64,000 bases of DNA, from IMG/VR virus record IMGVR_UViG_3300032116_000004, positions 124,001 to 188,000 of that record; one strand, written 5' to 3'. This document shows, one piece after another, positions 23,858 through 62,015 of this stretch (position 1 is the stretch's first letter; each line of letters opens with the position of its first letter). The translations under genes were made by a program, and so were the position numbers. The notes beneath the pieces are model-generated. The model did no database searches. It had not been told where the DNA came from and was given only the letters and a program-made list of their open reading frames with translations.

Positions 23858-24465
23858 TGTTTAGCATCCAGATGATGCTACAGTTGATTCCAGACAGCAT
23901 CTTTGTTTGGATCACCTATGCCATGCTGGCTGCAGGCCTTGGTGCCTACGTGGCCAGCAAGGTTCTGTTGTGGTTGCCCGTGATCAGCACTTACAAACTA
24001 CCAGTGGAGCTGATAGGTGTAGCGGTCTTGGTAGTTGGCGCTTATTTCTACGGTGGTGTGGCCTATAGAGAAATGATTGCTGAATATCGAGAAAAAGTGC
24101 GAGTCGCAGAACAACAAAGCCGAGAAGCCAACGAGCAACTGGCTGAAGAAGTAAAGAAAAAAGCCAAAGTCATAAAGGAAACTGTGTATGTCAACAGAGA
24201 AATCATCAAGGAAGTCACTGGTGGGCAGATTGATGCTACTTGCCGCTTGCCCCGTAGTGCTGTCAGCGTGCATGACCGCGCCAGTCAAAATGAAGTGGCC
24301 GGACGTGCCGAAGGAACTGATGGAACCCCCAGTGAAGTTAAAGCCAGTCAGCTCCTTACCACAGTCGTCGAAAACTACGGCTCCTGCCACGACAACGCGG
24401 CGAGATTAGAAGCATGGCAGCAGTGGTATAGAGATCAGAAACGAATCTGGGAGTCCATACGATGA
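23857..24465 (+). CDS. Rz-like inner-membrane spanin
   Basis: N-terminal TM helices, coiled coil, follows endolysin. Confidence 0.65.
   Translation: MFSIQMMLQLIPDSIFVWITYAMLAAGLGAYVASKVLLWLPVISTYKLPVELIGVAVLVVGAYFYGGVAYREMIAEYREKVRVAEQQSREANEQLAEEVKKKAKVIKETVYVNREIIKEVTGGQIDATCRLPRSAVSVHDRASQNEVAGRAEGTDGTPSEVKASQLLTTVVENYGSCHDNAARLEAWQQWYRDQKRIWESIR
24188..24409 (+). CDS. Embedded Rz1-like outer-membrane lipoprotein spanin
   Basis: Alternate frame inside Rz-like gene; lipobox VLSAC then Pro-rich TAPVKMKWPDVPKELMEPP. Confidence 0.6.
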   Translation: MSTEKSSRKSLVGRLMLLAACPVVLSACMTAPVKMKWPDVPKELMEPPVKLKPVSSLPQSSKTTAPATTTRRD

Positions 24466-24930: not shown

Positions 24931-25146
24931 ATGAAACATATCATATTCGCCGCGGGATTGGCCTTGGCAGTATCTTATCCGGTGATCGCCGCTGATACCA
25001 AACCAGAGACTCGCAAAGTCTGTGTGGATGTCAAGGACAAAGATGGAAAAGTGGTCAAAAACAAAGATGGCACTAACAAGCAGAACTGCCGAGAAGTCAA
25101 AGCACATCAAAAGCACGAAGGAACCAAAGTTCCTGAAAAGAAATAG
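24931..25146 (+). CDS. Small secreted Lys-rich protein
   Basis: Sec signal MKHIIFAAGLALAVSYPVIA; two Cys. Confidence 0.65.
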   Translation: MKHIIFAAGLALAVSYPVIAADTKPETRKVCVDVKDKDGKVVKNKDGTNKQNCREVKAHQKHEGTKVPEKK

Positions 25147-26003: not shown

Positions 26004-26450
26004 ATGAAGTTGACACGCAGGGTTTTACACAATCAAGCCAAGCCTGTAGATTTCCAGTATCCTGTCCGCAATCATGATCTGGCCACCCAGATGTTTGGGT
26101 TGATGCGCTTGCAAAATGGCATAGGATTGGCAGCTCCACAGATTGGCCTTTCCAAACGATTGTTTGTGATGAGCGTTGACGGACACGATCGGGCGTGCTT
26201 TAATCCTGTCATAGTGTCTAGCAGTGATGTGTTTGCCGAATTTGAGGAAGGATGCTTGAGTTTTCCCGGAGACTCATGTATACTTAAAAGACCCGATGCG
26301 ATCAGGGCGAGATACCAAAATCATTTCGGTGATTGGGTCGAAGCAGATCTTTCGGGACTTGAAGCCAGATGTTTCCAACACGAGTTGGATCATCTACAAG
26401 GAATAACCATGCATGATCGAGCCAAGGAACAGAATGCAACAGAATCCTGA
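26004..26450 (+). CDS. def: Peptide deformylase
   Basis: GIGLAAPQIG, EGCLS, QHELDHL. Confidence 0.92.
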   Translation: MKLTRRVLHNQAKPVDFQYPVRNHDLATQMFGLMRLQNGIGLAAPQIGLSKRLFVMSVDGHDRACFNPVIVSSSDVFAEFEEGCLSFPGDSCILKRPDAIRARYQNHFGDWVEADLSGLEARCFQHELDHLQGITMHDRAKEQNATES

Positions 26451-32889: not shown

Positions 32890-35800
32890 ATGGACATCAA
32901 TGAATTAGACAGTTACCGCCTGTCGGACGCGGTAAAGTTTCACACTGAATTAAACCCTGCACTCTGGGACGGCGATCGCATGCGTCCCGAAGTGCGTGAG
33001 GCCCTGATCAAAATCGCCGATGATTTCCGCGAATTCCTGGGCATCAGTGATCTCGCAGTGGAAGATATCACTGTGAGTGGATCCAATGCCGCATACACCT
33101 ATACTCCCCATTCCGACATAGATCTGCATCTCTTAGTAGATTTCAGCAAGCTCAATCCCGACCAAGTATATCAAGAGCTGTTCAACGCAAAGAAATATCA
33201 ATACAACGATCAACACGATATAAAAATCAGAGGCTATGACGTCGAGCTCTATGTGCAAGACGCAGGCAAGCCTGTTCGCAGCCTTGGTGAGTATTCCATC
33301 GTGCGTGACGACTGGACTCGTATTCCCGTGCGACGCCAAGGCAATCTCGACGAAAAATCAACCCAAGCAAAATACGAAAAACTCAGAGACCTGATTGAGC
33401 TTGCACTGACCAGCGATGATCTCCAAACAGTCACCAATCTCACTGACGTGATAAAACGATATCGGCAGGCCGGATTGGATGAACATGGCGAGTTCGGACC
33501 TGAGAATCTGGCCTACAAGATCCTGCGCACACAGGGCTTGGTCAAGCGATTGTTTGATCATCGTGCCAGCCTAGAAGATTCAAAACTGAGCCTGGCTGAG
33601 CGCCGAAAGAAAAAGAAAAAATCCAAAAAGAAATTCCGTTACGGTTCTTTTGGTGGATACTATTATCCAGGCTATGGTTATTATGGTCAGACCGGCGACG
33701 CCGAAGCCGCAGACGGTGGTGGTGATGGGGGCGGAGAAAGTGTGCGCGAAGACACAGAGATCAAAGTCCAAGCCAAGAGCATACCCATAGACAAAGTGGT
33801 GCGACGCTTCGTGCATTTTGCCGCGCACTATCTCAAACTAGATCAACTGCCTCGCATCATCTTGCAAGGTGAAAAATTTACCAAGCACATCCATTCAATG
33901 GGCCATTATGTAGATGACAAGAAAATGATCGAGGTGGCCACGCACGGTCGCCACATCATGGACATCCTGCGCACCGTGGCACATGAACTCACACATTACA
34001 AACAGCATGAACGCTTGGGCCGAGACATGCCTGACACAGCGGGTCGCACTGGCAGTCCCTACGAAAATGAAGCCAATGCCAAGGCCGGCATAATTATGCG
34101 CCATTTCCAAAATCGTTATCCAGAATTCTTTGGCGCAGAAACAGTGGAAGAACAACTCACGGAGTTTTCACCCGCACAGTCTGGTGCTACCGGTGAAGAC
34201 GATGACATCGAAGCACACTATGGTGATCAGACTCCACCAGGACCAGAATTCCCTCCTACCATGCCCGCAGGCACTGTGAGGGTAGATGTGAGCGATGTGT
34301 ATGACTGGTATAAACTGGGACAGCATATCTCCAACATGAAAGGCTTGGGCAAGCATGACTTTGGTGCAGGTCCGCCCAGTTCCATAATCTCGTTTGGCGA
34401 TGAAGAAACTGAACATAAGTTTATCAAAGATCTTGAAGCCACGGGCCTAGATGTCACTGACATCGATCCCAAGGATCCCCGGCAACCCGCTGGCATGCGA
34501 AAAGTCAAGACCGATCCTACCTACAATGTAGACGAGGGTCTAGGAAAAACACTGGCCACTGGTGCCTTGGCAGCCGCTGCCGCACTGGGACAGCCAGCAC
34601 AGGCACAGGATGTGGGGCGCACGGCCTATCAGATAGGCAAGCAGATATATCAACCCTCGGGCATATTCACCCGTGCAGGTGCTGAAGAAGAACTCAAGGG
34701 CATAGCCCGAGACATGGCACGTGGCAGCAGAGAAATACGTGTGGGTGGCAAGTTGATCTATGGTGGCCCTAGACCGCAAGGTGAGCGTGTTGCGTCAAAC
34801 GCCGCGGCTGCATCAGCAGAAGAAGCCTATCGACAGGCCCTGGAAAATGCCATCAACCGCGCACAACAACAGCATGGTCCTATCACACTGGGCCCCGGCG
34901 GTTGGAAAGTTGTGGATTATGAAGCCGACCAGATGGGCAACACATTCCGTGCCATGGTGGCCATAGAAGGTCCTGCACCGCGCAGAGAATCCATACAGAC
35001 GCCTGTGAGTCGCAGCCAAAAGGATCGCGAAGATTACTACAAGTTTGTCATGGGCAAGGCCACGACAGGTCGTCCTTTGACACGCTCGGAACAAGAATTC
35101 ATCAAGACCTATCGTCTACAACAGAAAATACAAGGTAAAGTGGCCGAAGATGCCGCAGGATACATCCCCACCAAGAAGCAGGCCCGAGATCCACGTTTCA
35201 AAACAGCACTCACAGTGGACATCCGACCTGGACAGGTAGGCAAGGAAGCCAACAAGTTGGGATTGCAGACCGACAGCCAAGGACGTCCTGCACTGTTGAT
35301 CAAGAACTTGGCCAATGCCTTGAAGGAATACAAAGAGACTGGAGTGTTTGAAGCAGTCAATCCCGTGACTCCTGCCGTGCCAGACCCACGACAAAAAATA
35401 GATCCATATCAAGGGCAGGCCCAGAAACGACAAAGACCACAAGACCGACCAAAGAAAAAAACACCATCGAGCACTGGCAATCCAAGATTCGTCAATATCG
35501 AAGTCAAAGAAGACGAAGATCTCATGGAAGTCAAGATGTCGCCCGGGGCCTTGGAAGCCTGGGCACGATCACCTGAAGCCGAAGGTATACGTGCTGGCTT
35601 TGAAGCAGAAATGATCTTCCGTGATACCCGCCGTGACGAAGATGAAGACTACGATCAAGAACCTGACTACGACTACGATGAGCGGCCCGATGACATCGAC
35701 CATGTCATAGACTTCTTCTCCAATGATGACTATGGCTATGGTTTGAGTCGCCAAGGCGCCAGGAATCTACGAGAAAGCCTGTGGGAAGCCTATACGGAAT

Positions 35801-37989
35801 GGGTGGATGAACAGATCAGCGAGAGTTGGGACGAGAATGCCGAAGATCAAGTGCGTGACTACATGGAGACCAACGTCTGGGACGATGACTCAGAACGCGA
35901 AAGCCGTATCCAAGACAAGGTCGAGGAAATGTTTGGTGACGAGGCAGTGCCCGCTATAATGAAAGCCGGCGACAGCGCACCAAGATTCACCCGGAGTTCA
36001 GATCAAGATGAATATGCACAATCCAACGAATTATACCAAAAATTCAAGCAAGCATCCGATGCGGCCTACGAAGCATTCGAAGAAGAAATAACCAATGAGT
36101 TTGAAAGCCAAGGCGAATATTACGATGCGGCTCGCGAATATTATTGGGACATGACGCGAGAAGGCGGCGAGTTTGACGAGCGCGACTTCCTCCGTGACCG
36201 CTATGGTTACATGACTGACATCGCCAACGAAGAAAGCCTTGACTGGCCCTACTGGAGCGGCGGTTCCTCTGGCACTGGCAGCCGTGAGTGGAGCGATATT
36301 GGTGACAGTTTACAGCGTGCCATTGACATGCCAGTGAGAGTGAGTTCAGGCTATCACTCAACCACACGCCGGCCCGGTCTATGGATCATCGAACCCGACG
36401 GCAGCCTAGATCCCGATGATCGTGATGATGAAATGGGCCTGGAGATCGTGTCTCCGCCCTTGCCCTTGCCAGAAACCCTGGAAAAATTAAAACAGGTCAT
36501 TGAGTGGGGTAACTCAGAAGCCGATGCCTACACCAACTCGTCCACCGGCTTGCACATGGGCATCTCTATACCCTATGTGGGCGGTGACGTAGACTATGTC
36601 AAATTGGTGCTGTTCATGGGCGACGAATATGTGTTAGACAAGTTTGGTCGTGCTTCCAACACCTATGCGGCATCGGCCATGGAAAAACTACGCAACAGCA
36701 TGCGAGTGGCACGCCGCCGTGGCACCTTGACTGAAGCCCGATTTGATCCCATGGGTGCGCTAGAACTGGTGCAGAAAAATCTCATTGAACTGGCTGCTCG
36801 TTATGTGCAGAACGGTGTGGGAGACAGCAAGTATACTTCCGCACACATCCAGGACGGCTACATCGAGTTCCGTAGCCCTGGTGGTGATTATTTGAGCATG
36901 GAGAGTCGCGGTGAATATGATGACATCCGCAATACCATGTTGCGTTTTGCTCGGGCCATGCAGATCGCAGGCAGCCCCAGCCTGGAACGTCGAGAGTATG
37001 CCAAGAAACTCTATAAACTGATCTCACCTGGTGCACAGGATGACGGTCTCAAGTTATTTTCTCAATTTGCCGCTGGCACCATAACTCCAGAAGAACTCAA
37101 GAAACAGTGGGCCAATGCTGTGCTCCAGAAAGAGATACCCACCACTGGTCAAGAAGAGTGGGAAGTGTATGATCAGCGCAAGTCTGGTCCGGATGGAGTG
37201 ATCGACTCTTTCTATGCTGATGAATATGACACTGCCTATATGAAAGCCCAGGACAAGTATGGCAACACACCCGAATGGCGCAATTTGGACATCCGTAAGA
37301 AACAACCCTGGTATGATGTCAAGGATTCCTACGGTGACATCATACTCACTGTGAGAGCCAGAGATTTTGACAGCGCCAAACAAAAGGTCCAGGCAGAGTA
37401 TGGGGATCGACTCTCCGACGATTGGGAGATATATCGCAGGCCCGATGACACTCCTGAGCCAGAAAAGAAACTGAGTCCACGTGCTCAAGTGGCCAAACGC
37501 CTCAAAGAACCCAAGGTCACACCGGCAGTGGCCGCAGACAATGAGCGAGATCGTGAACAGATACAGGCCCGCATAGGTGAGCCTCAACCCGCAGGCGCAG
37601 TATCAGACGCCGGACACTATCGTGTGATGTGGGATGAGCGCAGGAATGGAACAGTAACCAGTGATTCTTTGAACATTGATGCTGCCAGTGCCGAAGCAGC
37701 CAGACAGAATGTGCTAGATGCGTTGCAAATGCAAGGTCGAGATGTCATACAGATATCTGCACACCCCCAACAGCCACCAGCCTGGCGGCGCAATCGAGAA
37801 CCTGTTGCCACATCAACACAGGGCGAATTCTCAGGACAGTGGCAAGTTCGTAATGCCAATACCGGAGAAGTGGTTTACACATTCAGTGGCATAGGCAACA
37901 GTCAAGGCGATGCCAATCGTGTGGCACAACAATGGGTCCAACGCACTAGATTTGATGATCCTGTAGAAGTCGTTCCAGAGTTGAGATAA
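32890..37989 (+). CDS. 1699-aa multidomain polyprotein: Pol-beta NTase, HExxH peptidase-like, signal-peptide module, amidoligase, others
   Basis: SGSNA..DIDLH..ELYVQD; AHELTH..ENEANA; GFEAEM/EPDGSL/LEIVSP/STGLH/IEFR. Confidence 0.8.
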   Translation: MDINELDSYRLSDAVKFHTELNPALWDGDRMRPEVREALIKIADDFREFLGISDLAVEDITVSGSNAAYTYTPHSDIDLHLLVDFSKLNPDQVYQELFNAKKYQYNDQHDIKIRGYDVELYVQDAGKPVRSLGEYSIVRDDWTRIPVRRQGNLDEKSTQAKYEKLRDLIELALTSDDLQTVTNLTDVIKRYRQAGLDEHGEFGPENLAYKILRTQGLVKRLFDHRASLEDSKLSLAERRKKKKKSKKKFRYGSFGGYYYPGYGYYGQTGDAEAADGGGDGGGESVREDTEIKVQAKSIPIDKVVRRFVHFAAHYLKLDQLPRIILQGEKFTKHIHSMGHYVDDKKMIEVATHGRHIMDILRTVAHELTHYKQHERLGRDMPDTAGRTGSPYENEANAKAGIIMRHFQNRYPEFFGAETVEEQLTEFSPAQSGATGEDDDIEAHYGDQTPPGPEFPPTMPAGTVRVDVSDVYDWYKLGQHISNMKGLGKHDFGAGPPSSIISFGDEETEHKFIKDLEATGLDVTDIDPKDPRQPAGMRKVKTDPTYNVDEGLGKTLATGALAAAAALGQPAQAQDVGRTAYQIGKQIYQPSGIFTRAGAEEELKGIARDMARGSREIRVGGKLIYGGPRPQGERVASNAAAASAEEAYRQALENAINRAQQQHGPITLGPGGWKVVDYEADQMGNTFRAMVAIEGPAPRRESIQTPVSRSQKDREDYYKFVMGKATTGRPLTRSEQEFIKTYRLQQKIQGKVAEDAAGYIPTKKQARDPRFKTALTVDIRPGQVGKEANKLGLQTDSQGRPALLIKNLANALKEYKETGVFEAVNPVTPAVPDPRQKIDPYQGQAQKRQRPQDRPKKKTPSSTGNPRFVNIEVKEDEDLMEVKMSPGALEAWARSPEAEGIRAGFEAEMIFRDTRRDEDEDYDQEPDYDYDERPDDIDHVIDFFSNDDYGYGLSRQGARNLRESLWEAYTEWVDEQISESWDENAEDQVRDYMETNVWDDDSERESRIQDKVEEMFGDEAVPAIMKAGDSAPRFTRSSDQDEYAQSNELYQKFKQASDAAYEAFEEEITNEFESQGEYYDAAREYYWDMTREGGEFDERDFLRDRYGYMTDIANEESLDWPYWSGGSSGTGSREWSDIGDSLQRAIDMPVRVSSGYHSTTRRPGLWIIEPDGSLDPDDRDDEMGLEIVSPPLPLPETLEKLKQVIEWGNSEADAYTNSSTGLHMGISIPYVGGDVDYVKLVLFMGDEYVLDKFGRASNTYAASAMEKLRNSMRVARRRGTLTEARFDPMGALELVQKNLIELAARYVQNGVGDSKYTSAHIQDGYIEFRSPGGDYLSMESRGEYDDIRNTMLRFARAMQIAGSPSLERREYAKKLYKLISPGAQDDGLKLFSQFAAGTITPEELKKQWANAVLQKEIPTTGQEEWEVYDQRKSGPDGVIDSFYADEYDTAYMKAQDKYGNTPEWRNLDIRKKQPWYDVKDSYGDIILTVRARDFDSAKQKVQAEYGDRLSDDWEIYRRPDDTPEPEKKLSPRAQVAKRLKEPKVTPAVAADNERDREQIQARIGEPQPAGAVSDAGHYRVMWDERRNGTVTSDSLNIDAASAEAARQNVLDALQMQGRDVIQISAHPQQPPAWRRNREPVATSTQGEFSGQWQVRNANTGEVVYTFSGIGNSQGDANRVAQQWVQRTRFDDPVEVVPELR

Positions 37990-38573
37990 TGCGATCTCAG
38001 GAATTTATCTCAGAAGTAAACTTTCCCGATGAGTTATCAGTGAGCGACCGCATACAAAACTATTTTTTTGATCGCGGCTATCAGTTGGCCGGCGAAGGAC
38101 GCGATCAGATAGCCTTGTTGAGTCCCAGAAACACCATACTCAAAGTCTTGGGCATAGGTGAAGATGAGCGCGAACAGATAGTAAAAAACTACGTGAAATT
38201 TTTCGTCAACAATCAGAACGATCCTTATATTCCCAGGATTTACAACGTGGGTGATTTTGAAGTAGATGGAGAAACATATTTTGTGTATGAGATGGAATAT
38301 CTAGACTATGTGGCCAACGAAGAAGCCACGCTGGACTATCTAGAAAATCTCATGTCAGCAGTGGCACGCGGACGTGATCGTGTGCAGGAGTTCATGAAGA
38401 ACAATCCTGCTCCTAAAGAACTGGATCGTGATGACATCGTGGGTTTAGTAAATACTACGCTGAAATTAGAACAAGCCTTGGGCGGCCAGGCACCATTGGA
38501 TCTCAGCCAGATAGAGAACCTTCGCCGCCGCAGTGATGGACATCTAGTGATAATGGACCCCTACAGCCTATGA
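37989..38573 (+). CDS. Protein-kinase-like protein with MRxxEF leader
   Basis: AGEGRD, ILKV, IPRIY, MEYL, DLSQIEN, VIMDP. Confidence 0.55.
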   Translation: MRSQEFISEVNFPDELSVSDRIQNYFFDRGYQLAGEGRDQIALLSPRNTILKVLGIGEDEREQIVKNYVKFFVNNQNDPYIPRIYNVGDFEVDGETYFVYEMEYLDYVANEEATLDYLENLMSAVARGRDRVQEFMKNNPAPKELDRDDIVGLVNTTLKLEQALGGQAPLDLSQIENLRRRSDGHLVIMDPYSL

Positions 38574-38968
38574 GAGCACAAGAATTATTAGTCGAAATCA
38601 CTCGCAGAGACTTCTTGCGTGGTGCAGGTGCCGTGGCTGGCTCTGCGGCATTGGGATCGGCACAGGCTCAATCCGATCGGAACATCACCAAGATTATCAA
38701 CTCGGCTGCCATGTTGTGGGTGATATGTAAAAAACACTATCCCAACAACCCCAACACCCGAGAACTAGAAGAAACAGTCAAACGGCTTTGGAAAAGTAAA
38801 AGCGACAATGCTGTGGCATTTAATGAAGAATACACAGCAATGAAAGAAAGATTGGCAGATTGGGAAGCCCGAGATCCTGCCGGCTATGCCAACTTTGTCA
38901 ACCGATATATGATGAACTTTGCCAAGATTAAAGCCAACTTGGAAACATTACCAGAGATGATGATATGA
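38570..38968 (+). CDS. Leader + twin-arginine signal protein
   Basis: MRAQELLVE then ITRRDFLRGAGAVAGSAALGSAQA. Confidence 0.75.
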   Translation: MRAQELLVEITRRDFLRGAGAVAGSAALGSAQAQSDRNITKIINSAAMLWVICKKHYPNNPNTRELEETVKRLWKSKSDNAVAFNEEYTAMKERLADWEARDPAGYANFVNRYMMNFAKIKANLETLPEMMI

Positions 38969-40809
38969 GAGCACAAGAATTCGCTAATTCCAAACTAGTC
39001 ATCTTTGACATCGACGATACCCTGGTCAACACAGACACCAAGGTCAATGTGGTGCGAGATGGCCGGATCGTGAAGCAACTCAACAGTCACGATTTCACGC
39101 ACTATCACTTACAGCCCGGTGAAGAGTTTGACTTTGGTGCTTTCCGTGATGCCCGCGAATTCTACACACAGGCCCGGCCCATACCCGGCATGATCCGCCA
39201 ACTCAAACAAGACATCGCCACGGGCAACAAAGTGATCATGCTTACTGCCCGCTCGGACTTCAATGACCGAGAAGTTTTCCTGGACACATTCCGCCAGTAT
39301 GGCATTGACATGTCAAAAGTGCATGTGTATCGTGCTGGTAACTTGAACATCAAAGCCGCCACAGAAGAAAAGAAAAAGATCATACTACAACATCTCTTGG
39401 GCAAAGAACACTACGACAAGATCATCATGTATGATGATTCTGTGCCCAATTTAAATGCTTTTCTTAGCCTCAAACAAGATTATCCATGGTCTAAGTTCTA
39501 TGCCTGGCACGTGGATCCATCAGGAAAGGCAGACGAGTATCATAGGACTGATATCCGTGTCACAGAAGTCAGTGCGGATCGCTTGCAACAGTATCTAAAT
39601 CGCGCTGGACAACAGGTTGATCGCAGACAGGAAAGAATGGCCCAGGCCCGTGAGCGACTCAACAAGAGTTATGAAATATACCATGCAGACCGTCCTGCTG
39701 GCTCCAGCCAGATTGTAGATCGTTTTGAATCTGACACCCCTGCGGAAGCCCAACGTTATTATGAAAAGTTTATTCAGAACTACGAAAGTGATCGAGACTT
39801 TGATTTACAACTGCGTCGAAGCACAGGCATCGTGGAAGATTCATTCCGAGGCATCGATATCTCCATGGAAAAGGAAGATGATGAAATCATGGTCCAGGCG
39901 TCGGCGGGTGGCAAGCAGTTAGGGTCAGTGTTGTTTGTGGAATACGATGGCTATCTCATGCCACAGGATCTTGAAGTAGATGAACGATTCCGTGGGCAAG
40001 GTATCGCCCAGGCCATGTATGACTATGTGAAAAGCCTGGGTTATCGCATACGCAGGAGTGGCCAGCAGACCGACGCAGGTTCTGGATTCTGGAGAAAACA
40101 TCGTCCAGAACAGAATGTCTGGGAACAAAGTGTGGCGAAAGGCGATAAAATGAGCCTCATTAATCTAGATCAATCCTTGGCCGACACACCATCGGTATGG
40201 AAAAAATTCATAAGTTTGTTGCCACCACAATTGGCCCGAGAGTTTGTGGATGAGCGTCCAAGACCCGATCAAGACGATATAGACTTTCTCACTCCTTTGC
40301 GTCTGGTCAGTCCGCAGCCTGTATCAGTGCGTGTGGCCGACTTATTGCGTCATCCAGAGAATCAAGGAACCATTGGTAGATCGCCCGACGATGTGGTAAC
40401 AGCAGTAAACCAACGATGGGGTCTCAAGATCCCGTCAGGTAAGAAATATGATCCCAATCCCGCACGATATCGTGCCTATGCCCAGATGGCACCCGGCACA
40501 GCCAGTCCTTCAGTCATGGCCGACGGGGTGATCCTGTTTGGAGCAGGCAGATTCGTGGCCGCGGCTCTGCGTGGTGATGAAACCATGCGTGTGTGGAGCA
40601 TGACAAGAAAGCAAGGCGTGAAGGAAGTAGAGGAAAACTTTGCTGATGGTCGAGTAAAGGGCAAGAGCCGCCCGGGTCGTGTGAAACGTGCGGGTGCTAG
40701 TTGTAGTGGATCAGTCACAGATCTGCGTGCCCGTGCCAAGAAGTATGGTGGAGAACGGGGCAAAATGTATCATTGGTGCGCCAACATGAAGTCAGGTCGG
40801 AAGAAATAA
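38965..40809 (+). CDS. Polyprotein: HAD phosphatase + GNAT + ParB-like + basic Cys module
   Basis: FDIDDTL/LTARS/YDD; VDERFRGQGIA..QTDAG; ILFGAGR; NFADG..HWCAN. Confidence 0.75.
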   Translation: MRAQEFANSKLVIFDIDDTLVNTDTKVNVVRDGRIVKQLNSHDFTHYHLQPGEEFDFGAFRDAREFYTQARPIPGMIRQLKQDIATGNKVIMLTARSDFNDREVFLDTFRQYGIDMSKVHVYRAGNLNIKAATEEKKKIILQHLLGKEHYDKIIMYDDSVPNLNAFLSLKQDYPWSKFYAWHVDPSGKADEYHRTDIRVTEVSADRLQQYLNRAGQQVDRRQERMAQARERLNKSYEIYHADRPAGSSQIVDRFESDTPAEAQRYYEKFIQNYESDRDFDLQLRRSTGIVEDSFRGIDISMEKEDDEIMVQASAGGKQLGSVLFVEYDGYLMPQDLEVDERFRGQGIAQAMYDYVKSLGYRIRRSGQQTDAGSGFWRKHRPEQNVWEQSVAKGDKMSLINLDQSLADTPSVWKKFISLLPPQLAREFVDERPRPDQDDIDFLTPLRLVSPQPVSVRVADLLRHPENQGTIGRSPDDVVTAVNQRWGLKIPSGKKYDPNPARYRAYAQMAPGTASPSVMADGVILFGAGRFVAAALRGDETMRVWSMTRKQGVKEVEENFADGRVKGKSRPGRVKRAGASCSGSVTDLRARAKKYGGERGKMYHWCANMKSGRKK

Positions 40810-40817
40810 GTAATATC

Positions 40818-41000
40818 ATGCGAGCAAGAGAACTCACAGGACACAAGTGGATCACCACTATAACCATAAGCAATCCTGACTATACCGGCCGGATTGATGT
40901 GTCAGTGTATGCCCACAATCAAGCACAGGCCCGACAACTGCTCAAAGCGCAGTATCGCATCCAGGATCATCACATCGGATCCATCAGGAAGGCGCCATGA
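40818..41000 (+). CDS. Small protein with MRAREL leader
   Basis: Leader motif; ATGA overlap with next gene. Confidence 0.65.
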   Translation: MRARELTGHKWITTITISNPDYTGRIDVSVYAHNQAQARQLLKAQYRIQDHHIGSIRKAP

Positions 41001-41314
41001 GAGTCGCAGAATTCATCGCAGAAGATCTGTCAGCGGCTGGCTTCCGTATCCATGTTAGTCCACACCTGGATAATCGTGCAGAAAATCGCGGCATATCCAT
41101 GGCCACCATCTTGGGCATACTCAACAGATTGGATCGGGTGCGCAGACACATCCGTGGATTTGAGCCCAACTCACAGTTCAATGTCTATGACAGCCAACAC
41201 AACATACATCTTGGCATGATGCGATCAGGATTCGATCCAGATAAACTGTTGTTGAACACAGTGTATCACAACGAAAACTACCACGGGCGCAATCCCGTCA
41301 TAAAGGTTCGATAA
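40997..41314 (+). CDS. Possible BECR/DUF4258-like ribonuclease with leader
   Basis: MRVAEFIAE; SPHLDNRAENRGIS ... LNTVY. Confidence 0.45.
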   Translation: MRVAEFIAEDLSAAGFRIHVSPHLDNRAENRGISMATILGILNRLDRVRRHIRGFEPNSQFNVYDSQHNIHLGMMRSGFDPDKLLLNTVYHNENYHGRNPVIKVR

Positions 41315-41901
41315 TGAGAGCACAGGAGTTCCAGGAAGTGGCACTGCTGACCCGGGTCAAAGGCAAGGGCGAGGAGCCCAGCAATCTGCCCAAGTTTGGA
41401 CGGCCCATACTGCCCAAAGAAGAGATCAAATACCTTGGGAAAAAAGTCGGCAACATGGGCCGCTATGAGATCTGGCGAGACTATGTGGGTAGCCAGGTCA
41501 GTTACATCCTGGTAGATCCCCAAAGCCGCAGAGCCATAATCCATGCCTTTGGCAGCAGATATCAGAGAAATCCCAACTCATTCATAGTGGCAGGCCTGTA
41601 TGCCGCACCCGGCAATCCTGTGCGTGCCAGCCAGTTCTATCATGCCTTGATCACGGAATTAGGACTGGATCTCATTTCTGATATCAAGCAGAGTCCCGGA
41701 GGCTACAAAGTGTGGCGTGAATTACAGCAAAGATTTCGTGACGTGAATGTATATGGCTATGATACCAAGCGCAACGAACTGCTGAACGTCACTGCACGTG
41801 ATGAAGAAATGACACATGTGCCCGCTGAAATCGTGCGCAAGGGCGGGCCCGATGTCAAAGACGTGGCCCGCAACATCAGGCTAGTGGCCACAGCAAAGTG
41901 A
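41314..41901 (+). CDS. GNAT-like protein with leader
   Basis: MRAQEFQE; ASQFYHAL...LISDIKQSPGGYKVWREL. Confidence 0.5.
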   Translation: MRAQEFQEVALLTRVKGKGEEPSNLPKFGRPILPKEEIKYLGKKVGNMGRYEIWRDYVGSQVSYILVDPQSRRAIIHAFGSRYQRNPNSFIVAGLYAAPGNPVRASQFYHALITELGLDLISDIKQSPGGYKVWRELQQRFRDVNVYGYDTKRNELLNVTARDEEMTHVPAEIVRKGGPDVKDVARNIRLVATAK

Positions 41902-41934
41902 TCGCCAGCAGGCGCACACGCCGGTAAATATCGC

Positions 41935-42225
41935 ATGAAATCAACATTCGTAAAATTAAACGTAGATCTACACTGCGATTGGAAAAAGACTCCGCCGCCC
42001 TATAGACTCTATGTCAACGATGAACTGTTCACTGAACGCACCTACATCTGGGGTGGCACACAGTATCTCCAAGAAATCATCAGCCTCAGCGCACCGCCTG
42101 GACGCTACAGCCTACGTATCGACAATCTGGGCGATCCTGACTGCAAATTCAAACTGCGCAATCTCTCAGTAGAAACAGGATCAGCCACGGTGCTGGATTC
42201 TAAAACCGTGGAGATCACCCAATGA
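41935..42225 (+). CDS. Hypothetical protein
   Basis: TAAATA 4 nt upstream. Confidence 0.7.
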   Translation: MKSTFVKLNVDLHCDWKKTPPPYRLYVNDELFTERTYIWGGTQYLQEIISLSAPPGRYSLRIDNLGDPDCKFKLRNLSVETGSATVLDSKTVEITQ

Positions 42226-42404
42226 GAGCCCGAGAATTCGTCACAGAAACCACGGTCAGCGGTGCCATAGCCACGGTTGCACAGCCCATGATGGCCGTGC
42301 TCGCAAGAGAACCTGCACAAGCACCCGCTGATAAATATAAAACTACTTCTAGGAAGCCGGCACCAGATGTTAACCGACGATTTAAAAACTCTTTTAGCAA
42401 GTAA
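42222..42404 (+). CDS. Small protein with MRAREFVTE leader
   Basis: Leader motif; ATGA coupling. Confidence 0.65.
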   Translation: MRAREFVTETTVSGAIATVAQPMMAVLAREPAQAPADKYKTTSRKPAPDVNRRFKNSFSK

Positions 42405-42807
42405 CTTTGCATATTATCTCAAGGCACAGATGTTCCATTGGAACGTGGAAGGCCCTGATTTCGGGCAACTGCACGAATTTTTCGGCGAAGTCTACGCTGA
42501 TGCCTACGGCGCTGTGGACCAGATAGCCGAATACATCCGCACCCTGGATGACTACGCTCCCGGAAGCCTAGAGCGTTTTTCAGAACTCAGCGAGATCCCT
42601 GGACAGACCAAGATTCCCCGAGCCCGGCTCATGCTGGAAGAATTGCTACAAGATACCGAAACCATGAAAGCCATGGTCATGCGTGTGTTTGAATCTGCAC
42701 AGGCCGAAGGTCGCGAAGACATCGCTAACTTCATGGCCGAACGCCAAAACAGTCATGGCAAGTATGCCTGGCAGACACGCTCATTCCTCAAGGATCAACG
42801 AGCATGA
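42367..42807 (+). CDS. dps: Dps-family mini-ferritin
   Basis: HWNVEGPDFGQLHEFFGEVY...DQIAEYIR...HGKYAW. Confidence 0.9.
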   Translation: MLTDDLKTLLASNFAYYLKAQMFHWNVEGPDFGQLHEFFGEVYADAYGAVDQIAEYIRTLDDYAPGSLERFSELSEIPGQTKIPRARLMLEELLQDTETMKAMVMRVFESAQAEGREDIANFMAERQNSHGKYAWQTRSFLKDQRA

Positions 42808-43739: not shown

Positions 43740-46399
43740 TGAATCTGTTTAATCTAATTGAAAATACCACAGGCGGCTACGACAATCTCCGCGCACTGTT
43801 ACAGGCCGTGAGCACCCGCTCGCCAGCCGATCTCAACATAGGTGGTGAACCCATCACCCTGGACTACATGGAAGCTAACTTCCTCAACGGTATCTATCGA
43901 GCATATTTGAAAGCCGGACGCCAAGAAGAATTCATCCAGGACCTGGGCGATGCACGGCGCTTTGACATGCACATGAAGAAACTGCGCGATCTCATCGCTA
44001 AACAGAAATCCTTCCGTGGATCAGTTCCGGGTCAACGTGGTGTCACAGGCGATGTTCCTGCTGGTGTGATGGAAGGTCTGGAAGCCTTGGAAGAGATAGC
44101 CATGCAGGATCCCAACAATCCCACAGATCAAAATGCCGGCAAATTGAACTGGACTCGCATGATCCAGGACTACATGGGCAACAAACCCTACACTGAATTT
44201 GAATTTGGCACGGATCGTCCGCTCACTCTGTATCGCACACAGATCTATGCCATACTCAAAGCATTTGGCAACATGAAACCACAGCAGAAACTCAACATCA
44301 TCCTCAACACCTTTGGCAACAAAGTGGCTACCGTGGAATACCTTGACAAACTGCGTGCCAAGGGCATGATGCCCAAAAAAGTGCCTGCCTATGTGGCGCC
44401 TGGCACAGAGGCTCCTGCACCGGGACAGATGAGCCTTCCGGGCATAGACATGCCTCGCATCAAAGAAGCTCAAAAAAAAAGTCCGCAAGAATTAGCTAGA
44501 GACACGGCTGTTTCGGCCAAGGTCCAACGTGCGTTCCAACTGGCCAGGGCTCGTCAACCTGCCGCTGCCTCTGACATCGAAGCCTTTGTCAAAGATGAAA
44601 TAGAACGTGGCGAAGAACTAGCACAACAGGTCGGTCAGTTACAGCAAGACAATGAACAACAGAGCCAGCAGATAGCACAACTGACCAAGGCCGTGAGCCA
44701 GCAAGCCAAGGCCGAACCTGAACCAAAGCCACCTGCACCATCAGCACCTGCCGCACGGGCACCCACGGCACCTGCCAAACCAGAAAAAGAACCCACTGCC
44801 AAAGCAGAGCCCGAGGCCCTGCCCAAGGACAAAGAAGAACCCAAGACCGAACCCAAGGCCGAACCTGCACCGCAGACACAACCGGCTCCAGCCAAGGCTC
44901 GCAAGCCCAGGGCTAAACCTCGTGCCAAACCACAAAAGGCCCCCGGGGAATTGCCGCCCGTGGATACCACCATCCAGATGCCACCACAGCAGATACCCGA
45001 TCAGCGACCTTCAGCGCAGATATTGCAGTTTCCTGGCGGCAAGAAAGATGAAGTAGGCGCTGCCATGCAAGGCCTGGATCTTGGTGATTTGCCACGTGCC
45101 GCGGGACAAAACGAAAGCGTGAGAGTCACTGTGAGAGGCAATCCGTTGTTTGAAGGCAAGGATGGCACTGTGAAACAACGCATCGCCGATGACTTCTTCC
45201 TGGTAGATGTAGATGGATTTGGATCACATGCTTTCCATGTCAGCAAATTGGTGTTTGAGATGCAAACCCGACTGGATCGCTTCAATATTGACAGACCCAT
45301 GTTGCCATCCGGCGTGGCCAAGGTCCAATACGCCCGTGACAACAACATGTATGATGATGCCCGCATACAAGAAGCCTTGCCTGACAAGGCCATGGCTGTG
45401 TTGAAAAATCTACAGCAACAGCAACAACAACCAGAACCTGCAATTGATCTCAATACACCTGCTGGTCCACGACGTGGTCGTCCTACCAATGCCCAACGAG
45501 CACAGCGCCACGAAGAGTTCTTGACTCTCCGACGTCGCATAGCATTGTTGGACGAGTTGATCCAGATGAAAGAACAGATTGATCGCTTGTTCCTCAAGGC
45601 ACAGAATGTGCGTGGCGGTATCTATCCTGGCTTGCAAGCAGACATTGAGATGGAAGAACTGTATCCTGTGCCAGAAACAGATCGCCAATTCCAAGATCTC
45701 CGAGACAAATACACCAAAGACTTAACCGCACTGCAAAAGTTCTTGGCCATGAAGAAGGCAGTGTATCGTGAAGACGAAGATTCGATGTTGGGCGAAAGCA
45801 CTGCCTTGGTGCGCTTGAAACAAGCACGTCAGGCACTGAGTCAACAAGGTGTGGCGGAAGGCACCGACGACGTCAAAAAGCGAATGTCCAAGTTGGAAGC
45901 ACTGGCCTTGGCTGCAAATCGTGCCGGTGATGATGCAAAATGCAAAATGTATCAGCAAAAGATTCAATCACTCAAACAAAAATTATCTAGAGATATGTCA
46001 ACAGGTGTAGCGGAAGCAGTTACAGATGTAAAGGCTGGCATGGCTGAAATATATCATCGCCTGGCTCCCAAAATAGAACGCCACCGAGACAGTTTCCTTG
46101 CCGGGCAACTGTATGATGAGTTGGAAAACTATGCTGAACTACACGGTGCCGAAGGCGAGTTCAAAAGGATGATGGCCACGGCCAGGAACAGTGCCCACAT
46201 GGAATATGATACCAACCCGGGTGGTTTCCAAAACTGGTTCTGGTTCTTGCCATTTGAAAAACAGTTGGATGAAAAACAAGATGCTTGTTACCGCAAGGTA
46301 AAAAGTCGTTACAAAGTATGGCCTTCGGCTTATGCATCGGGTGCCTTGGTCCAGTGCCGCAAGAAAGGTGCTGACAACTGGGGCAACAAGAAAAAATGA
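43739..46399 (+). CDS. Large modular polyprotein with Pro/Lys/Glu linker and GVAE junctions
   Basis: MNLFNLIE leader; QGVAEG, TGVAEA, QLDE; C-terminal ACYRKVKSRYKVWPSAYASG module. Confidence 0.75.
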   Translation: MNLFNLIENTTGGYDNLRALLQAVSTRSPADLNIGGEPITLDYMEANFLNGIYRAYLKAGRQEEFIQDLGDARRFDMHMKKLRDLIAKQKSFRGSVPGQRGVTGDVPAGVMEGLEALEEIAMQDPNNPTDQNAGKLNWTRMIQDYMGNKPYTEFEFGTDRPLTLYRTQIYAILKAFGNMKPQQKLNIILNTFGNKVATVEYLDKLRAKGMMPKKVPAYVAPGTEAPAPGQMSLPGIDMPRIKEAQKKSPQELARDTAVSAKVQRAFQLARARQPAAASDIEAFVKDEIERGEELAQQVGQLQQDNEQQSQQIAQLTKAVSQQAKAEPEPKPPAPSAPAARAPTAPAKPEKEPTAKAEPEALPKDKEEPKTEPKAEPAPQTQPAPAKARKPRAKPRAKPQKAPGELPPVDTTIQMPPQQIPDQRPSAQILQFPGGKKDEVGAAMQGLDLGDLPRAAGQNESVRVTVRGNPLFEGKDGTVKQRIADDFFLVDVDGFGSHAFHVSKLVFEMQTRLDRFNIDRPMLPSGVAKVQYARDNNMYDDARIQEALPDKAMAVLKNLQQQQQQPEPAIDLNTPAGPRRGRPTNAQRAQRHEEFLTLRRRIALLDELIQMKEQIDRLFLKAQNVRGGIYPGLQADIEMEELYPVPETDRQFQDLRDKYTKDLTALQKFLAMKKAVYREDEDSMLGESTALVRLKQARQALSQQGVAEGTDDVKKRMSKLEALALAANRAGDDAKCKMYQQKIQSLKQKLSRDMSTGVAEAVTDVKAGMAEIYHRLAPKIERHRDSFLAGQLYDELENYAELHGAEGEFKRMMATARNSAHMEYDTNPGGFQNWFWFLPFEKQLDEKQDACYRKVKSRYKVWPSAYASGALVQCRKKGADNWGNKKK

Positions 46400-46929
46400 G
46401 ATATCGAGAGATCCTTGAAGCATGCTGGACTGGTTATAGAAAAGCCGGTATGAAGCGCAAGGGTGATCGCTGGGTTCCCAACTGTGTGCCTGTGAGCGAA
46501 CAGCACATGGAAGAAAATCTCCGAGACTGGTTCAAAGAGAAGTGGGTGCGATTTGGGCCCGACGGTAAGATCCGTGGTGACTGCGCCAGAGGTTCCGACT
46601 CAGAAGGCAAGCCAAAGTGCCTGCCACAGTCAAAAGCACACAGCCTAGGCAAAAAAGGTCGTGCGTCGGCAGCAGCCAAGAAGCGTAGAGAAGATCCCAA
46701 TCCAGAACGCAGAGGTGCTGCCAAGAATGTGTCCACAAAGGTTCGCGAGGATGCAGTGCAAGATCTAGTGAAAGATCTAAAAAATCCACACAGTTATGAT
46801 GCCATTGATCACATGATGCAGACCATTGCTAAAAAATCTGGAATCACTGCAAAAGAACTGCATGATCGTTTCGTGAAAAAACATGACATAACTCCAGACG
46901 AATACATCAAACGCAAAGGCAACAAATGA
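46396..46929 (+). CDS. Leader + basic Cys modules
   Basis: MRYREILE; ACWTGY..VPNCVP; MEE-NLRDWFKEKW..KPKCLP; VRE. Confidence 0.7.
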   Translation: MRYREILEACWTGYRKAGMKRKGDRWVPNCVPVSEQHMEENLRDWFKEKWVRFGPDGKIRGDCARGSDSEGKPKCLPQSKAHSLGKKGRASAAAKKRREDPNPERRGAAKNVSTKVREDAVQDLVKDLKNPHSYDAIDHMMQTIAKKSGITAKELHDRFVKKHDITPDEYIKRKGNK

Positions 46930-47333
46930 GAAATCTAATCAACCGCATGGAAGCCATAGAACAAGGTTGTCCCCCTGCAACACAAAACATTGACCTCAAC
47001 CTCAAGAACAGGAAGAAAGCCATAGATGAATATGACTATGGTCCCATGGATCCCAACGCTCCCAACGAAGAATATTGGGAAAGGATAGCCGCAGAGTGGA
47101 ACATGGACGACGTCGATCAAGCCAAGTCGGCACGCTGTGGCAACTGCGCGGCCTTTGACATATCAGATGACATGCAAGATTGCATAGCCAAAGGCATCGG
47201 TGCAGAACCTGGGTCGGACCCTATGAGCACCATAGATGCAGGCACCTTGGGTTATTGCAAATTCCTCAAATTCAAATGTGCTGCCAAACGCACCTGCACC
47301 GCTTGGGTGGAAGGTGGTCCCATAACAAAATGA
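46926..47333 (+). CDS. Cys-rich hypothetical protein with leader
   Basis: MRNLINRMEAIE; CGNC, YC, C....TC. Confidence 0.7.
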   Translation: MRNLINRMEAIEQGCPPATQNIDLNLKNRKKAIDEYDYGPMDPNAPNEEYWERIAAEWNMDDVDQAKSARCGNCAAFDISDDMQDCIAKGIGAEPGSDPMSTIDAGTLGYCKFLKFKCAAKRTCTAWVEGGPITK

Positions 47334-47677
47334 GAGTGACTGACATCGTGCGCGAGACCAAAGATATTGCCAGTTTCCTAAGTGGTCAATCTCCCATGGT
47401 AACGCTGCCACCTGGTAGTGCTAGAGCCAAGATTTTCACACCACAGGATCGCCAGGCCATAGAACGTTTTGTTCCTGCGGTGCGCGACATGACCGATCAT
47501 GACGCACTGGAATCGGCCAAAGAGTTTTTAGAAACTTTCTTGAATCGCATCAAAACCGGCGAACAGTTGGACAGGACTGACCTTCGCATAGTCGGCGGAC
47601 TCTATGACATCATCCGCAAACAAACCGATCGTTATGACACGTTTATGAGGAAATACAATCTAGATGAAAGCCAGTGA
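47330..47677 (+). CDS. Hypothetical protein with MRVTDIVRE leader
   Basis: ATGA coupling; leader. Confidence 0.7.
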   Translation: MRVTDIVRETKDIASFLSGQSPMVTLPPGSARAKIFTPQDRQAIERFVPAVRDMTDHDALESAKEFLETFLNRIKTGEQLDRTDLRIVGGLYDIIRKQTDRYDTFMRKYNLDESQ

Positions 47678-48194
47678 ATTCGTTTCTGAGAAATGGAGCC
47701 GCAAATACAAACGCTCTATCAACTGTGCCCGGCCTCGTGGTTTCAGCCAGAAAGCGCACTGTGCTGGTCGTCGAAAGACCGACGAAGCCATAGGTGCCAA
47801 TTACAACACCGCTCGTAGCATCGCTCAGGACATCCATGATTATGTTCTGAACATAGGACAGACCATTAGTCTGCAAGGGTCTCGAGGTCGTCCATATGTA
47901 GAGCAACTGCAATCAGAAATGTTGCCCATGATCGAGGAACTGCGTGCGCTTGGCTACGACTATCACCCCGAAGCCCGAGACTACATGGTGCCATTGACCA
48001 TAGACAATGCTCTCGATCCCAGACTGACCGAAGAACAACTGGATGAGATACTCATGTTTAAAGGATCACCTTGCACCGTGGACTGCTCGGGTCACAGGGC
48101 AGGATACGAGTGGTGGTTCCGCAAACGCAAGACTCCCAACTCATGGAGCCCCAGTTTCAACAAGGGCGCTGCCTTGGCAGCCGCAGGTAAGTAA
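47664..48194 (+). CDS. Three-module protein with MKASEFVSE leader
   Basis: KWSRKYKRSINC..HC / KTDE / QLDE-ILMFKGSPCTVDCSGH. Confidence 0.7.
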   Translation: MKASEFVSEKWSRKYKRSINCARPRGFSQKAHCAGRRKTDEAIGANYNTARSIAQDIHDYVLNIGQTISLQGSRGRPYVEQLQSEMLPMIEELRALGYDYHPEARDYMVPLTIDNALDPRLTEEQLDEILMFKGSPCTVDCSGHRAGYEWWFRKRKTPNSWSPSFNKGAALAAAGK

Positions 48195-61986: not shown

Positions 61987-62015
61987 CCATCCTCGGCTCT
62001 AACTCGGAGAAAAAA

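What the first reader, a model, noticed from the sequence alone, without database searches (positions are those of the whole stretch)
38570..38668. Twin-arginine (Tat) signal hidden behind the leader
Seen: MRAQELLVE is followed directly by ITRRDFLRGAGAVAGSAALGSAQA, matching the Tat consensus (S/T-R-R-x-F-L), an h-region and an A-x-A site. Known: Tat exports folded proteins post-translationally. Inference: a two-step address in which the protein is packaged in the capsid, trimmed at Glu9, injected folded, then exported by host Tat to the periplasm (e.g. superinfection exclusion or envelope repair). I know no described example, but cannot exclude that the leader is simply a long n-region.
Basis: partly seen in the sequence, partly recalled or inferred. 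Interest (0 to 1): 0.85.

Follow-up and report, generated by a model that had tools for sequence, protein, structure and literature searches.

The report
Tat export signal behind capsid leader
A small gene of an uncultured T4-like giant phage carries a genuine, conserved twin-arginine (Tat) export signal directly behind a 9-residue leader that resembles the T4 capsid-targeting tag. The same leader-plus-Tat module sits on cell-wall enzymes in related phages, so these phages may inject proteins that the new host then exports to its own periplasm, but that route is untested.

Summary
ORF 38570..38968 (+, 132 aa) reads MRAQELLVE, then ITRRDFLR, a Gly/Ala h-region and AQA. It passes the curated cut-offs of Pfam TAT_signal and TIGR01409, with or without residues 1-9. 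Leader, RR motif and A-x-A site are kept in every homolog, down to 39% identity in the mature part.

The leader (M-R-A-x-E-F-[ILV]-x-E) heads 8-10 neighbouring genes and about 200 distinct ORFs in viral contigs. It is conserved as a peptide and closely resembles the T4 capsid-targeting sequence MKTYQEFIAE.

New here: leader+Tat is a recurrent module. I found 23 distinct N-termini in 36 fetched loci (some duplicates of one contig), always with 2-3 residues between Glu9 and RR. Cargo includes GH19 wall hydrolases, a LysM-SLT transglycosylase and M48 peptidases. In some relatives the Tat motif lies inside fusion proteins, always just after [IL]-x-E.

The two-step route (packaged, trimmed at Glu9, injected, exported by host Tat) fits all this but is unproven; I put it at about 0.4. 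The main rival is direct Tat export in the producing cell with the leader serving another role. Known Tat classes I and V explain the architectures without cleavage. No described precedent was found.

The parts
38570..38968 (+). ORF of 132 aa: leader + Tat signal + 99-aa helical mature domain
38570..38596 (+). 9-residue leader MRAQELLVE, an instance of the group-wide M-R-A-x-E-F-[ILV]-x-E leader that resembles the T4 capsid-targeting sequence. L-V-E fits the T4 prohead-protease consensus as I recall it (L/I-x-E).
   Evidence: one search shows only that T4 CTS residues 8 and 10 govern processing
38597..38620 (+). Twin-arginine motif I-T-R-R-D-F-L-R (RR = 38603-38608)
   Evidence: invariant in homologs
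38621..38659 (+). Weakly hydrophobic Gly/Ala-rich h-region (residues 18-30)
   Evidence: mean Kyte-Doolittle about 1.1 by my hand count, typical of Tat rather than Sec signals
38660..38668 (+). A-Q-A signal-peptidase I site; predicted cleavage after Ala33
   Evidence: the -1 Ala is invariant and -3 is A, V or I in homologs
38669..38965 (+). Mature domain: 99 aa, 11.6 kDa, pI 8.7, confident helical bundle, no known fold or family
   Evidence: invariant H56, P58, N59, N60
37989..38573 (+). Upstream leader gene (MRSQEFISE), weakly similar to the T7 0.7 protein-kinase family
38965..40809 (+). Downstream leader gene (MRAQEFANS), HAD/PNK-like plus GNAT, 614 aa. Its first 17 nt are identical to those of the Tat gene.
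40818..42404 (+). Four further leader genes (40818, 40997, 41314, 42222), mostly small and basic, with one non-leader ORF (41935) among them
46396..48194 (+). More leader-type starts (46396 MRYREILEA; 47664 MKASEFVSE)
32890..37989 (+). 1699-aa polyvalent-type protein (nucleotidyltransferase, HExxH zincin, amidoligase). Its modules occur as separate leader genes in other phages.
34537..34605 (+). Internal signal-peptide-like stretch (GLGK, then an Ala-rich h-region, then AQA) directly after a module end ...NVDE

Best explanation
The gene encodes a small helical protein destined for the periplasm. Its N-terminus is a composite of two addresses. Residues 1-9 are this phage group's version of the T4 capsid-targeting propeptide. 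Residues 10-33 are a cleavable class-I Tat signal.

Proposed course (inferred):
1. The protein is made in the infected cell.
2. The leader recruits part of the pool to the prohead core.
3. A T4-type prohead protease clips it after Glu9 (L-V-E|I).
4. The trimmed protein, now starting I-T-R-R, enters the next host with the DNA and refolds.
5. TatBC recognises it and it is exported. Signal peptidase cuts after AQA.

Some of the pool is probably also exported directly in the producing cell. Relatives use the same leader-Tat module to send wall hydrolases and M48 peptidases to the periplasm.

Shown: the two signals, their conservation, their recurrence and the envelope-type cargo. Inferred: packaging, cleavage, injection, and export after injection.
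For: Tat signal:
- It passes two curated models with or without the leader.
- It is invariant in homologs.

Leader:
- It heads 8-10 window genes and about 200 distinct ORFs in at least 120 viral contigs.
- Codons vary (AGA/CGA, all four GCN) while the residues are kept, so selection acts on the peptide.
- In 100 ORFs not selected for positions 7-9, 88% have [LIVMF] at position 7 and 68% have Glu at position 9.
- The T4 CTS is MKTYQEFIAE. Its first 10 residues suffice for packaging, and residues 8 and 10 govern processing.

Phage lineage:
- The DNA polymerase and clamp loader are T4-type. The nearest isolates are Phosso, Atu_ph07 and 121Q.
- Group 2 jumbo phages, the group that includes Atu_ph07, carry the T4 gp21 protease according to PMC7824862.

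Cargo and neighbours:
- Leader cargos are mostly basic, pI 9-10.6, like the T4 internal proteins.
- They lie next to a polyvalent protein, a class predicted to be injected.
- Homologous cargo carries other lineage-specific leaders in Lu11 and LR756508.

Leader+Tat module:
- 23 distinct N-termini in 36 fetched loci, some of them duplicates of one contig.
- The gap between Glu9 and RR is always 2-3 residues, although 0-10 were allowed in the scan.
- Cargo: GH19, LysM-SLT and M48.
- The leader stays conserved on these exported proteins.

Fusion proteins:
- In these the Tat motif always follows [IL]-x-E: ITE, IAE, LDE.
- Fused and unfused forms swapped recently: dS of the mature part is 0.02.
Against: - There is no direct evidence of packaging, cleavage or injection.
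- The prohead protease was not found in the window or on any leader contig. Its presence rests on clade-level literature.
- A working Tat signal would already export the protein in the producing cell, competing with packaging.
- An 11-residue n-region is ordinary for Tat signals. Class V Tat substrates (FecR) show that a Tat signal can work behind a folded N-terminal domain without cleavage.
- Wall hydrolases behind the module could simply be Tat-exported lysis enzymes.
- The benefit of injecting a muralytic enzyme into the cytoplasm only to export it again is unclear.
- After trimming only 2-3 residues would precede RR, which is shorter than usual (my knowledge).
- Expression timing is unknown.
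- The constant spacing may reflect common descent of one mobile module rather than a functional constraint.
Confidence: 0.4

Rival explanations
1. Direct export only. The protein is an ordinary class-I Tat substrate, made and exported in the infected cell, where it could act in lysis control, envelope remodelling or exclusion. The leader is just the first part of the n-region. It is shared with neighbours because it has another peptide-level role (expression tag, degron or chaperone tag, perhaps for the phage Clp ATPase, or a pro-sequence) and is irrelevant to routing.
For: - The n-region length and net positive charge are normal for Tat signals.
- The HMM scores hardly change when the leader is removed.
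- The cargo in relatives (GH19, SLT, M48) acts in the periplasm and needs nothing more than Tat.
- A Clp-type ATPase lies near leader clusters in the window and in L128/L129.
- The nearest isolate, Phosso, has no such leader in the 43 kb around its polymerase gene, so the leader is not a general feature of the clade.
Against: - It leaves the close match to the T4 CTS (QEFIxE at the same distance from Met1) in a T4-type phage as a coincidence.
- It does not explain why [IL]-x-E is kept right before the Tat motif even when the rest of the leader is lost in fusions.
- It does not explain why cytoplasmic enzymes and exported enzymes share one tag.
- It does not explain why homologous cargo carries different lineage-specific leaders.
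Confidence: 0.35
2. Uncleaved or internal Tat signal used as a membrane anchor (Tat class III or V). The h-region stays in the inner membrane and tethers a periplasmic helical domain. In the fusion variants it tethers it to a cytoplasmic domain (ParB-like, or weakly PGDYG-like), giving a transmembrane two-domain protein.
For: - Fusion architectures place folded domains before the Tat motif.
- The class V precedent is FecR.
- In L130 a Gly-rich hydrophobic stretch precedes the motif, reminiscent of class IV.
Against: - The window protein has only 9-11 residues before RR.
- The h-region is short (13 residues), weakly hydrophobic, and followed by a conserved A-x-A site. This points to a cleavable signal.
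- The same cargo occurs with and without the N-terminal domain, at near-identical sequence.
Confidence: 0.1
3. The Tat-like motif is a chance or non-functional resemblance. One possibility is a conserved linker with a role inside the capsid.
For: Export has not been tested, and the function of the mature domain is unknown.
Against: - Two curated models pass their cut-offs.
- RR, F-L, the h-region and A-x-A are conserved over deep divergence.
- The same module precedes peptidoglycan hydrolases, which must reach the periplasm.
Confidence: 0.03

Closest known systems
T4 capsid-targeting sequence (CTS) of internal proteins IPI-III
   Same: - A short N-terminal tag, MKTYQEFIAE in T4 against M-R-A-x-E-F-[ILV]-x-E here.
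- It sits on unrelated, mostly basic cargo in variable gene cassettes of a T4-type phage.
- [ILV]-x-E lies at the positions that govern processing in T4.
   Different: - One residue shorter, with R-A in place of K-T-Y.
- Far more genes carry it: 8-10 within about 10 kb here.
- No T4 internal protein is known to carry an export signal.
- Packaging and cleavage are untested here.
Class I Tat substrates (cleavable N-terminal twin-arginine signal)
   Same: T-R-R-x-F-L-R motif, a weakly hydrophobic h-region and an A-x-A site. The curated HMM thresholds are passed.
   Different: - The n-region is a conserved module shared with non-exported phage proteins.
- The gene is phage-encoded. The exact TRRDFLRGAG coding pattern occurs in only 4 IMG/VR contigs, all of this phage group.
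Class V Tat substrates (FecR) and class IV (Streptomyces Rieske): internal Tat signals
   Same: Relatives place the same Tat motif behind folded domains: L128, L129, L135 and L130.
   Different: - Those known signals are uncleaved anchors. Here an A-x-A site is kept.
- An [IL]-x-E always precedes the motif.
- The window protein itself has no N-terminal domain.
Polyvalent proteins of phages (Iyer et al. 2017, cited in PMC7824862)
   Same: The adjacent 1699-aa protein combines nucleotidyltransferase, zincin and amidoligase modules. Such proteins are predicted to be injected and processed. Its modules exist as separate leader genes elsewhere.
   Different: The Tat protein is a separate small gene. 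Export signals inside or beside polyvalent proteins did not come up in the passages of that overview that I searched.
Exported or virion-borne phage muralytic enzymes (signal-peptide and SAR endolysins; T7 gp16 internal-core transglycosylase; my knowledge)
   Same: Related phages put GH19 and LysM-SLT enzymes behind the leader-Tat module, so they reach the wall without a holin.
   Different: - Those known enzymes use Sec or direct ejection into the envelope, not Tat.
- No natural Tat-type phage endolysin turned up in the literature search.

Membership tests
T4-type capsid-targeted internal protein (CTS protein) | N-terminal tag of about 10 residues resembling MKTYQEFIAE | tested here: met
   MRAQELLVE here. 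The group consensus is M-R-A-Q-E-F-I-x-E, conserved at peptide level.
T4-type capsid-targeted internal protein (CTS protein) | Processing site [L/I]-x-E at the end of the tag, cleaved by the prohead protease | tested here: inconclusive
   The motif is present (L-V-E|I), and E9 and [ILV]7 are enriched in unselected leader ORFs. Cleavage itself cannot be tested with these tools.
T4-type capsid-targeted internal protein (CTS protein) | The phage encodes a gp21-type (S77) prohead protease and scaffold core | tested here: inconclusive
   No head genes in the window or in the leader loci. The 80 gp21-bearing contigs fetched carry no leader ORFs within 3 kb. The only support is clade-level literature plus T4-type replication genes.
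T4-type capsid-targeted internal protein (CTS protein) | Protein present in virions in trimmed form and delivered to the host | not testable with these tools
   The phage is uncultured. No isolate carries the leader families that were queried.
Tat substrate, class I | S/T-R-R-x-F-L-K motif at the n/h boundary | tested here: met
   T11-R-R-D-F-L-R17. PF10518 28.8 bits against a 22.7 cut-off; TIGR01409 26.0 against 16.7.
Tat substrate, class I | Uncharged, moderately hydrophobic h-region followed by an A-x-A site | tested here: met
   Residues 18-30, then AQA; conserved in homologs.
Tat substrate, class I | Export depends on TatABC and on the RR pair | not testable with these tools
   Needs reporter export in wild type against a tatC mutant, and an RR-to-KK mutant.
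Tat substrate, class V (FecR type) | Internal, uncleaved Tat signal preceded by a folded cytoplasmic domain | tested here: not met
   The window protein has only 9-11 residues before RR and keeps an A-x-A site. Relatives P0006, P0007, L129b, L135 and L130 do have preceding domains.

The most novel reading that the evidence does not exclude
A group of uncultured T4-like giant phages packs periplasm-directed proteins into the capsid by means of a CTS-like leader. The cargo includes wall hydrolases, a lytic transglycosylase, M48 peptidases and this helical protein. Head maturation unmasks a minimal Tat signal. After injection the new host's own Tat system exports these pre-made effectors to the periplasm. 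This would be an 'inject-then-export' route that lets an incoming phage act on the envelope before any gene is expressed.
Probability: 0.35. Interest if true: 0.85.

Novelty: new variant of a known kind. Interest (0 to 1): 0.68.

Why it matters
Known phage-injected proteins act in the cytoplasm or form the ejection conduit. None is known to be re-addressed by a host export pathway.

If the two-step route is real, it defines a new class of virion-delivered envelope effectors. Possible roles are exclusion of other phages, receptor removal, wall remodelling and priming of lysis. It would also show that head maturation can unmask a second sorting signal.

If the rival is right, the result is still new. 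It would give a family of Tat-exported phage wall hydrolases and peptidases, a holin-independent and Tat-dependent way for phage enzymes to reach the wall. It would also give a conserved 9-residue N-terminal tag whose function needs explaining.

Either way the module is short, portable and directly testable in T4/E. coli. It offers a possible tool for delivering proteins to the periplasm by phage.

Tried and rejected
No useful result:
- No nucleotide or protein match to the gene or its region in 50,697 phage records. Two widespread leader families also have no isolate match.
- The mature domain has no family. Pfam, PHROGs and NCBIfam show only the Tat signal.
- An exhaustive HMMER search of 1.84 billion representatives gave two close relatives (fusion forms) and one weak hit to an unrelated repeat protein.
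- The AlphaFold model is confident, but Foldseek against the PDB gave nothing with E below 0.9. A PDB sequence search gave nothing.
- The ESM Atlas lead to Psb27/PsbQ (score 0.57) was rejected as unsupported.
- Promoter and terminator scans and the T4 late-promoter motif were at chance level, so timing is unknown.
- No tRNAs.

Attempts to link the leader to a gp21 protease failed:
- T4 head proteins against the window and 166 loci gave no hit.
- A gp21 profile scan of viral contigs returned 80 loci. None of their listed contig names matched the leader contigs by eye, and none had a leader ORF nearby.

Rejected readings:
- A nucleotide-level signal (promoter or translational operator) as the cause of leader conservation. 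Synonymous codons vary freely, including AGA/CGA.
- Gene conversion as the sole reason for signal conservation. dS in the signal is not consistently lower than in the mature part.
- Assembly error as the cause of the fusions. L128 and L129 differ in DNA sequence yet both stay in frame.

Full report
**1. The observation**

ORF 38570..38968 (+ strand, 132 aa) starts at an ATG that overlaps the stop of the upstream gene. It reads MRAQELLVE, then ITRRDFLR, then GAGAVAGSAALGS, then AQA, then QSD.... There is no other in-frame start before residue 48.

- Pfam TAT_signal matches residues 9-29 at 28.8 bits (cut-off 22.7).
- TIGR01409 matches at 26.0 bits (cut-off 16.7).
- With residues 1-9 removed, both models still pass.

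Five homologs from metagenomes are 98% to 39% identical. They keep M1-E5, E9-A21 (including RR) and the final Ala of the A-x-A site unchanged, while the mature part diverges. dN/dS is about 0.08 for the mature part and about 0.13 for the signal.

**2. What the window is**

PHROG and tblastn matches show a T4-superfamily giant phage.

- The DNA polymerase is 48% identical to Sinorhizobium phage Phosso, 43% to Atu_ph07 and 42% to 121Q.
- A gp44-like clamp loader, a Clp-type ATPase, Dps/ferritin, radical-SAM enzymes and FolE are present.
- The source is a 315,778-bp freshwater contig.
- No isolate is close at DNA level.
- An embedded spanin-like gene pair with a lipobox suggests a host with an outer membrane.
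- No head genes lie in this window.

**3. The leader**

Eight ORFs between 37989 and 46929 begin with MR..E[FLI]. Two more leader-like starts lie at 47330 and 47664.

My rough estimate of chance matches is about 3. The hits yielded about 200 distinct leader ORFs, often clustered.

Codons vary (AGA/CGA, all four GCN, TTT/TTC) while the residues are kept. In 100 leader ORFs that were not selected for positions 7-9, 88% have [LIVMF] at position 7 and 68% have Glu at position 9. Conservation is therefore at the peptide level.

The T4 capsid-targeting sequence is MKTYQEFIAE. Its first 10 residues suffice for packaging. Residues 4 and 7 matter for targeting and residues 8 and 10 for processing. The present leader matches it closely, and some copies read QEFIAE exactly.

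Further points in favour of a virion-targeting propeptide:
- Cargo is diverse: kinase-like, HAD-GNAT, ParB-like, zincin, amidoligase, and small basic proteins. It is mostly basic.
- Modules of the adjacent 1699-aa polyvalent-type protein occur as separate leader genes in other phages.
- Homologous cargo carries other leaders in other lineages: MKIQLAVA in Lu11, and M..LL[VF]E in the huge phage LR756508, there next to an ORF whose N-terminus reads to me like a tail sheath (not tested).
- Group 2 jumbo phages carry the T4 gp21 protease according to PMC7824862.

I could not show the protease in this genome or on any leader contig. I rate 'leader = CTS-like propeptide' at about 0.65-0.7.

**4. The Tat module is recurrent**

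The exact T-R-R-D-F-L-R-G-A-G coding pattern occurs in only four IMG/VR contigs, all of this phage group. Scans for leader followed by RR-x-F-L gave 9 contigs at fixed spacing. With 0-10 residues allowed between Glu9 and RR they gave 32 contigs, 29 of them true hits.

In all there are 23 distinct leader-Tat N-termini in 36 fetched loci. Some loci are duplicates of one contig. The gap between Glu9 and RR is always 2 residues (IT, ID, MD) or 3 residues (DLS, DMS, DLT, NMS, DIS, DVS).

Cargo behind the module:
- Glyco_hydro_19 wall hydrolases (most cases).
- A LysM plus SLT transglycosylase (L146).
- Peptidase_M48 (L154, L155).
- At least two unknown families.
- The window's own family.

These genes sit in the same leader clusters, next to amidoligase, zincin and ferritin genes. 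I saw no recognisable lysis genes among the listed neighbours. Because the cargo acts on the envelope, the Tat signals are very probably functional.

**5. Internal Tat motifs**

In some relatives the same Tat module is in frame behind other domains:
- leader, ParB-like domain, ...VPAEQITE, then ITRR (L128);
- ...VPVEHIAE, then ITRR (L129);
- an N-terminal domain with a weak, sub-threshold PGDYG match, ...GMTEQELDE, then LTRR, with a different cargo (L129, L135, L136);
- an 880-aa protein, ...GMYEEELDE, then LTRR (L130).

In every case [IL]-x-E directly precedes [IL]-T-R-R. L003 (separate gene) and L129 (fusion) have nearly identical mature parts (dS 0.02), so the two states exchanged recently. 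L141 is a read-through fusion of the Tat gene with the next leader gene.

The window's polyvalent protein also has a signal-peptide-like stretch right after a module end ...NVDE.

These patterns fit cleavage after Glu that exposes an export signal. They are not proof, for three reasons:
- The degenerate sites may simply descend from leaders.
- Internal initiation is possible.
- Tat class IV and V substrates show that internal Tat signals can work uncleaved (PMC13673990).

**6. Mechanism and rivals**

Best explanation, at about 0.4: a composite address. The leader takes the protein into the prohead and is clipped after Glu9. The trimmed protein enters the next host, refolds, is exported by Tat and is cut after AQA. 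Part of the pool is probably exported in the producing cell as well.

T4 work suggests that packaged proteins refold after delivery, so 'injected folded' is unlikely.

- Main rival, at about 0.35: direct export only, with the leader serving some other peptide-level role.
- Minor rival: an uncleaved membrane anchor (0.1).
- Minor rival: a non-functional motif (0.03).

Against the best explanation:
- There is no evidence of packaging.
- Tat export would compete with packaging in the producer cell.
- The benefit of injecting muralytic enzymes is unclear.
- The protease is unverified.
- Expression timing is unknown.

**7. Function of the cargo**

The mature 99-aa domain is a confident helical bundle (pLDDT above 90) with invariant H56, P58, N59 and N60. 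It has no match in Pfam or in the PDB, by sequence or by fold. The Psb27/PsbQ lead from the ESM Atlas is too weak to use. Its role in the periplasm remains unknown.

**8. Novelty**

Literature searches found no phage protein that combines a capsid-targeting tag with a Tat signal, and no natural Tat-type phage endolysin.

I file this as a new variant of known kinds: a CTS-type cassette protein and a class-I Tat substrate combined in one module. It comes with a testable and more radical reading.

Noticed in passing
window 37989-42404, 46396-46929, 47330-48194: A cluster of 8-10 genes that all start with M-R-[AS]-x-E-[FL].., the same 9-residue leader. The first 17 nt of 38570 and 38965 are identical. 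The leader heads about 200 distinct ORFs in at least 120 viral contigs.
   Followed up: yes
window 32890-37989 (internal stretch 34537-34605): A 1699-aa polyvalent-type protein with a nucleotidyltransferase domain, an HExxH zincin at 33982-34011 and an amidoligase domain. It contains an internal signal-peptide-like segment right after ...NVDE. Its modules are separate leader genes in L019, L072 and L008.
   Followed up: partly
window 23857-24465 and 24188-24409; also 24931-25146: A possible embedded spanin pair: a 202-aa ORF with an N-terminal membrane helix, and inside it in another frame a 73-aa ORF with lipobox LSAC. Nearby is a 71-aa ORF with a Sec-type signal and no leader. No endolysin was recognised next to them.
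   Followed up: no
window 42222-42404 and 40818-41000: Two small leader proteins of 60 aa each belong to widespread families of 50-70 residues. One has a Ser/Gly/Ala-rich middle and a very basic tail, which recalls the basic internal proteins of T4.
   Followed up: partly
L126 (Pseudomonas phage Lu11, JQ768459 146980-167828): At least eight near-consecutive genes begin with MKIQLAVA or a close variant. This is a different shared leader, placed on cargo homologous to leader cargo of the present phage group.
   Followed up: partly
L139 (uncultured huge phage LR756508, 203155-243727): A third leader type, M..(K)LL[VF]E, on several neighbouring genes, one of them homologous to the same cargo. The genes lie close to an ORF whose N-terminus looks like a tail sheath.
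   Followed up: no
L159 3628-4338 (- strand): Two adjacent leader-Tat genes in one contig. One is a GH19 hydrolase. By N-terminal similarity to L154, the other belongs to the M48 peptidase family (not scanned itself). Their signal modules are nearly identical.
   Followed up: partly
window 47664-48194; end of 38965-40809; L031, L069, L072, L130: A recurring Cys/His-containing motif (..KYK.SINC..P.GFSQKAHCAGR.. and related C-terminal ..HWCANMKSG..) in several leader proteins. L130 has a twice-repeated CNMTEAGE.CP.HG..ECG motif flanking the Tat module. Function unknown.
   Followed up: no
window 26413-28695, 42367-42807, 313-1719, 22076-23209, 60446-62852: Accessory genes typical of this class of giant phage: a ClpA/B-like ATPase, Dps/ferritin, two radical-SAM enzymes, a nucleotide-sugar epimerase and a GTP cyclohydrolase. 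The last hints at a 7-deazaguanine DNA modification pathway.
   Followed up: no
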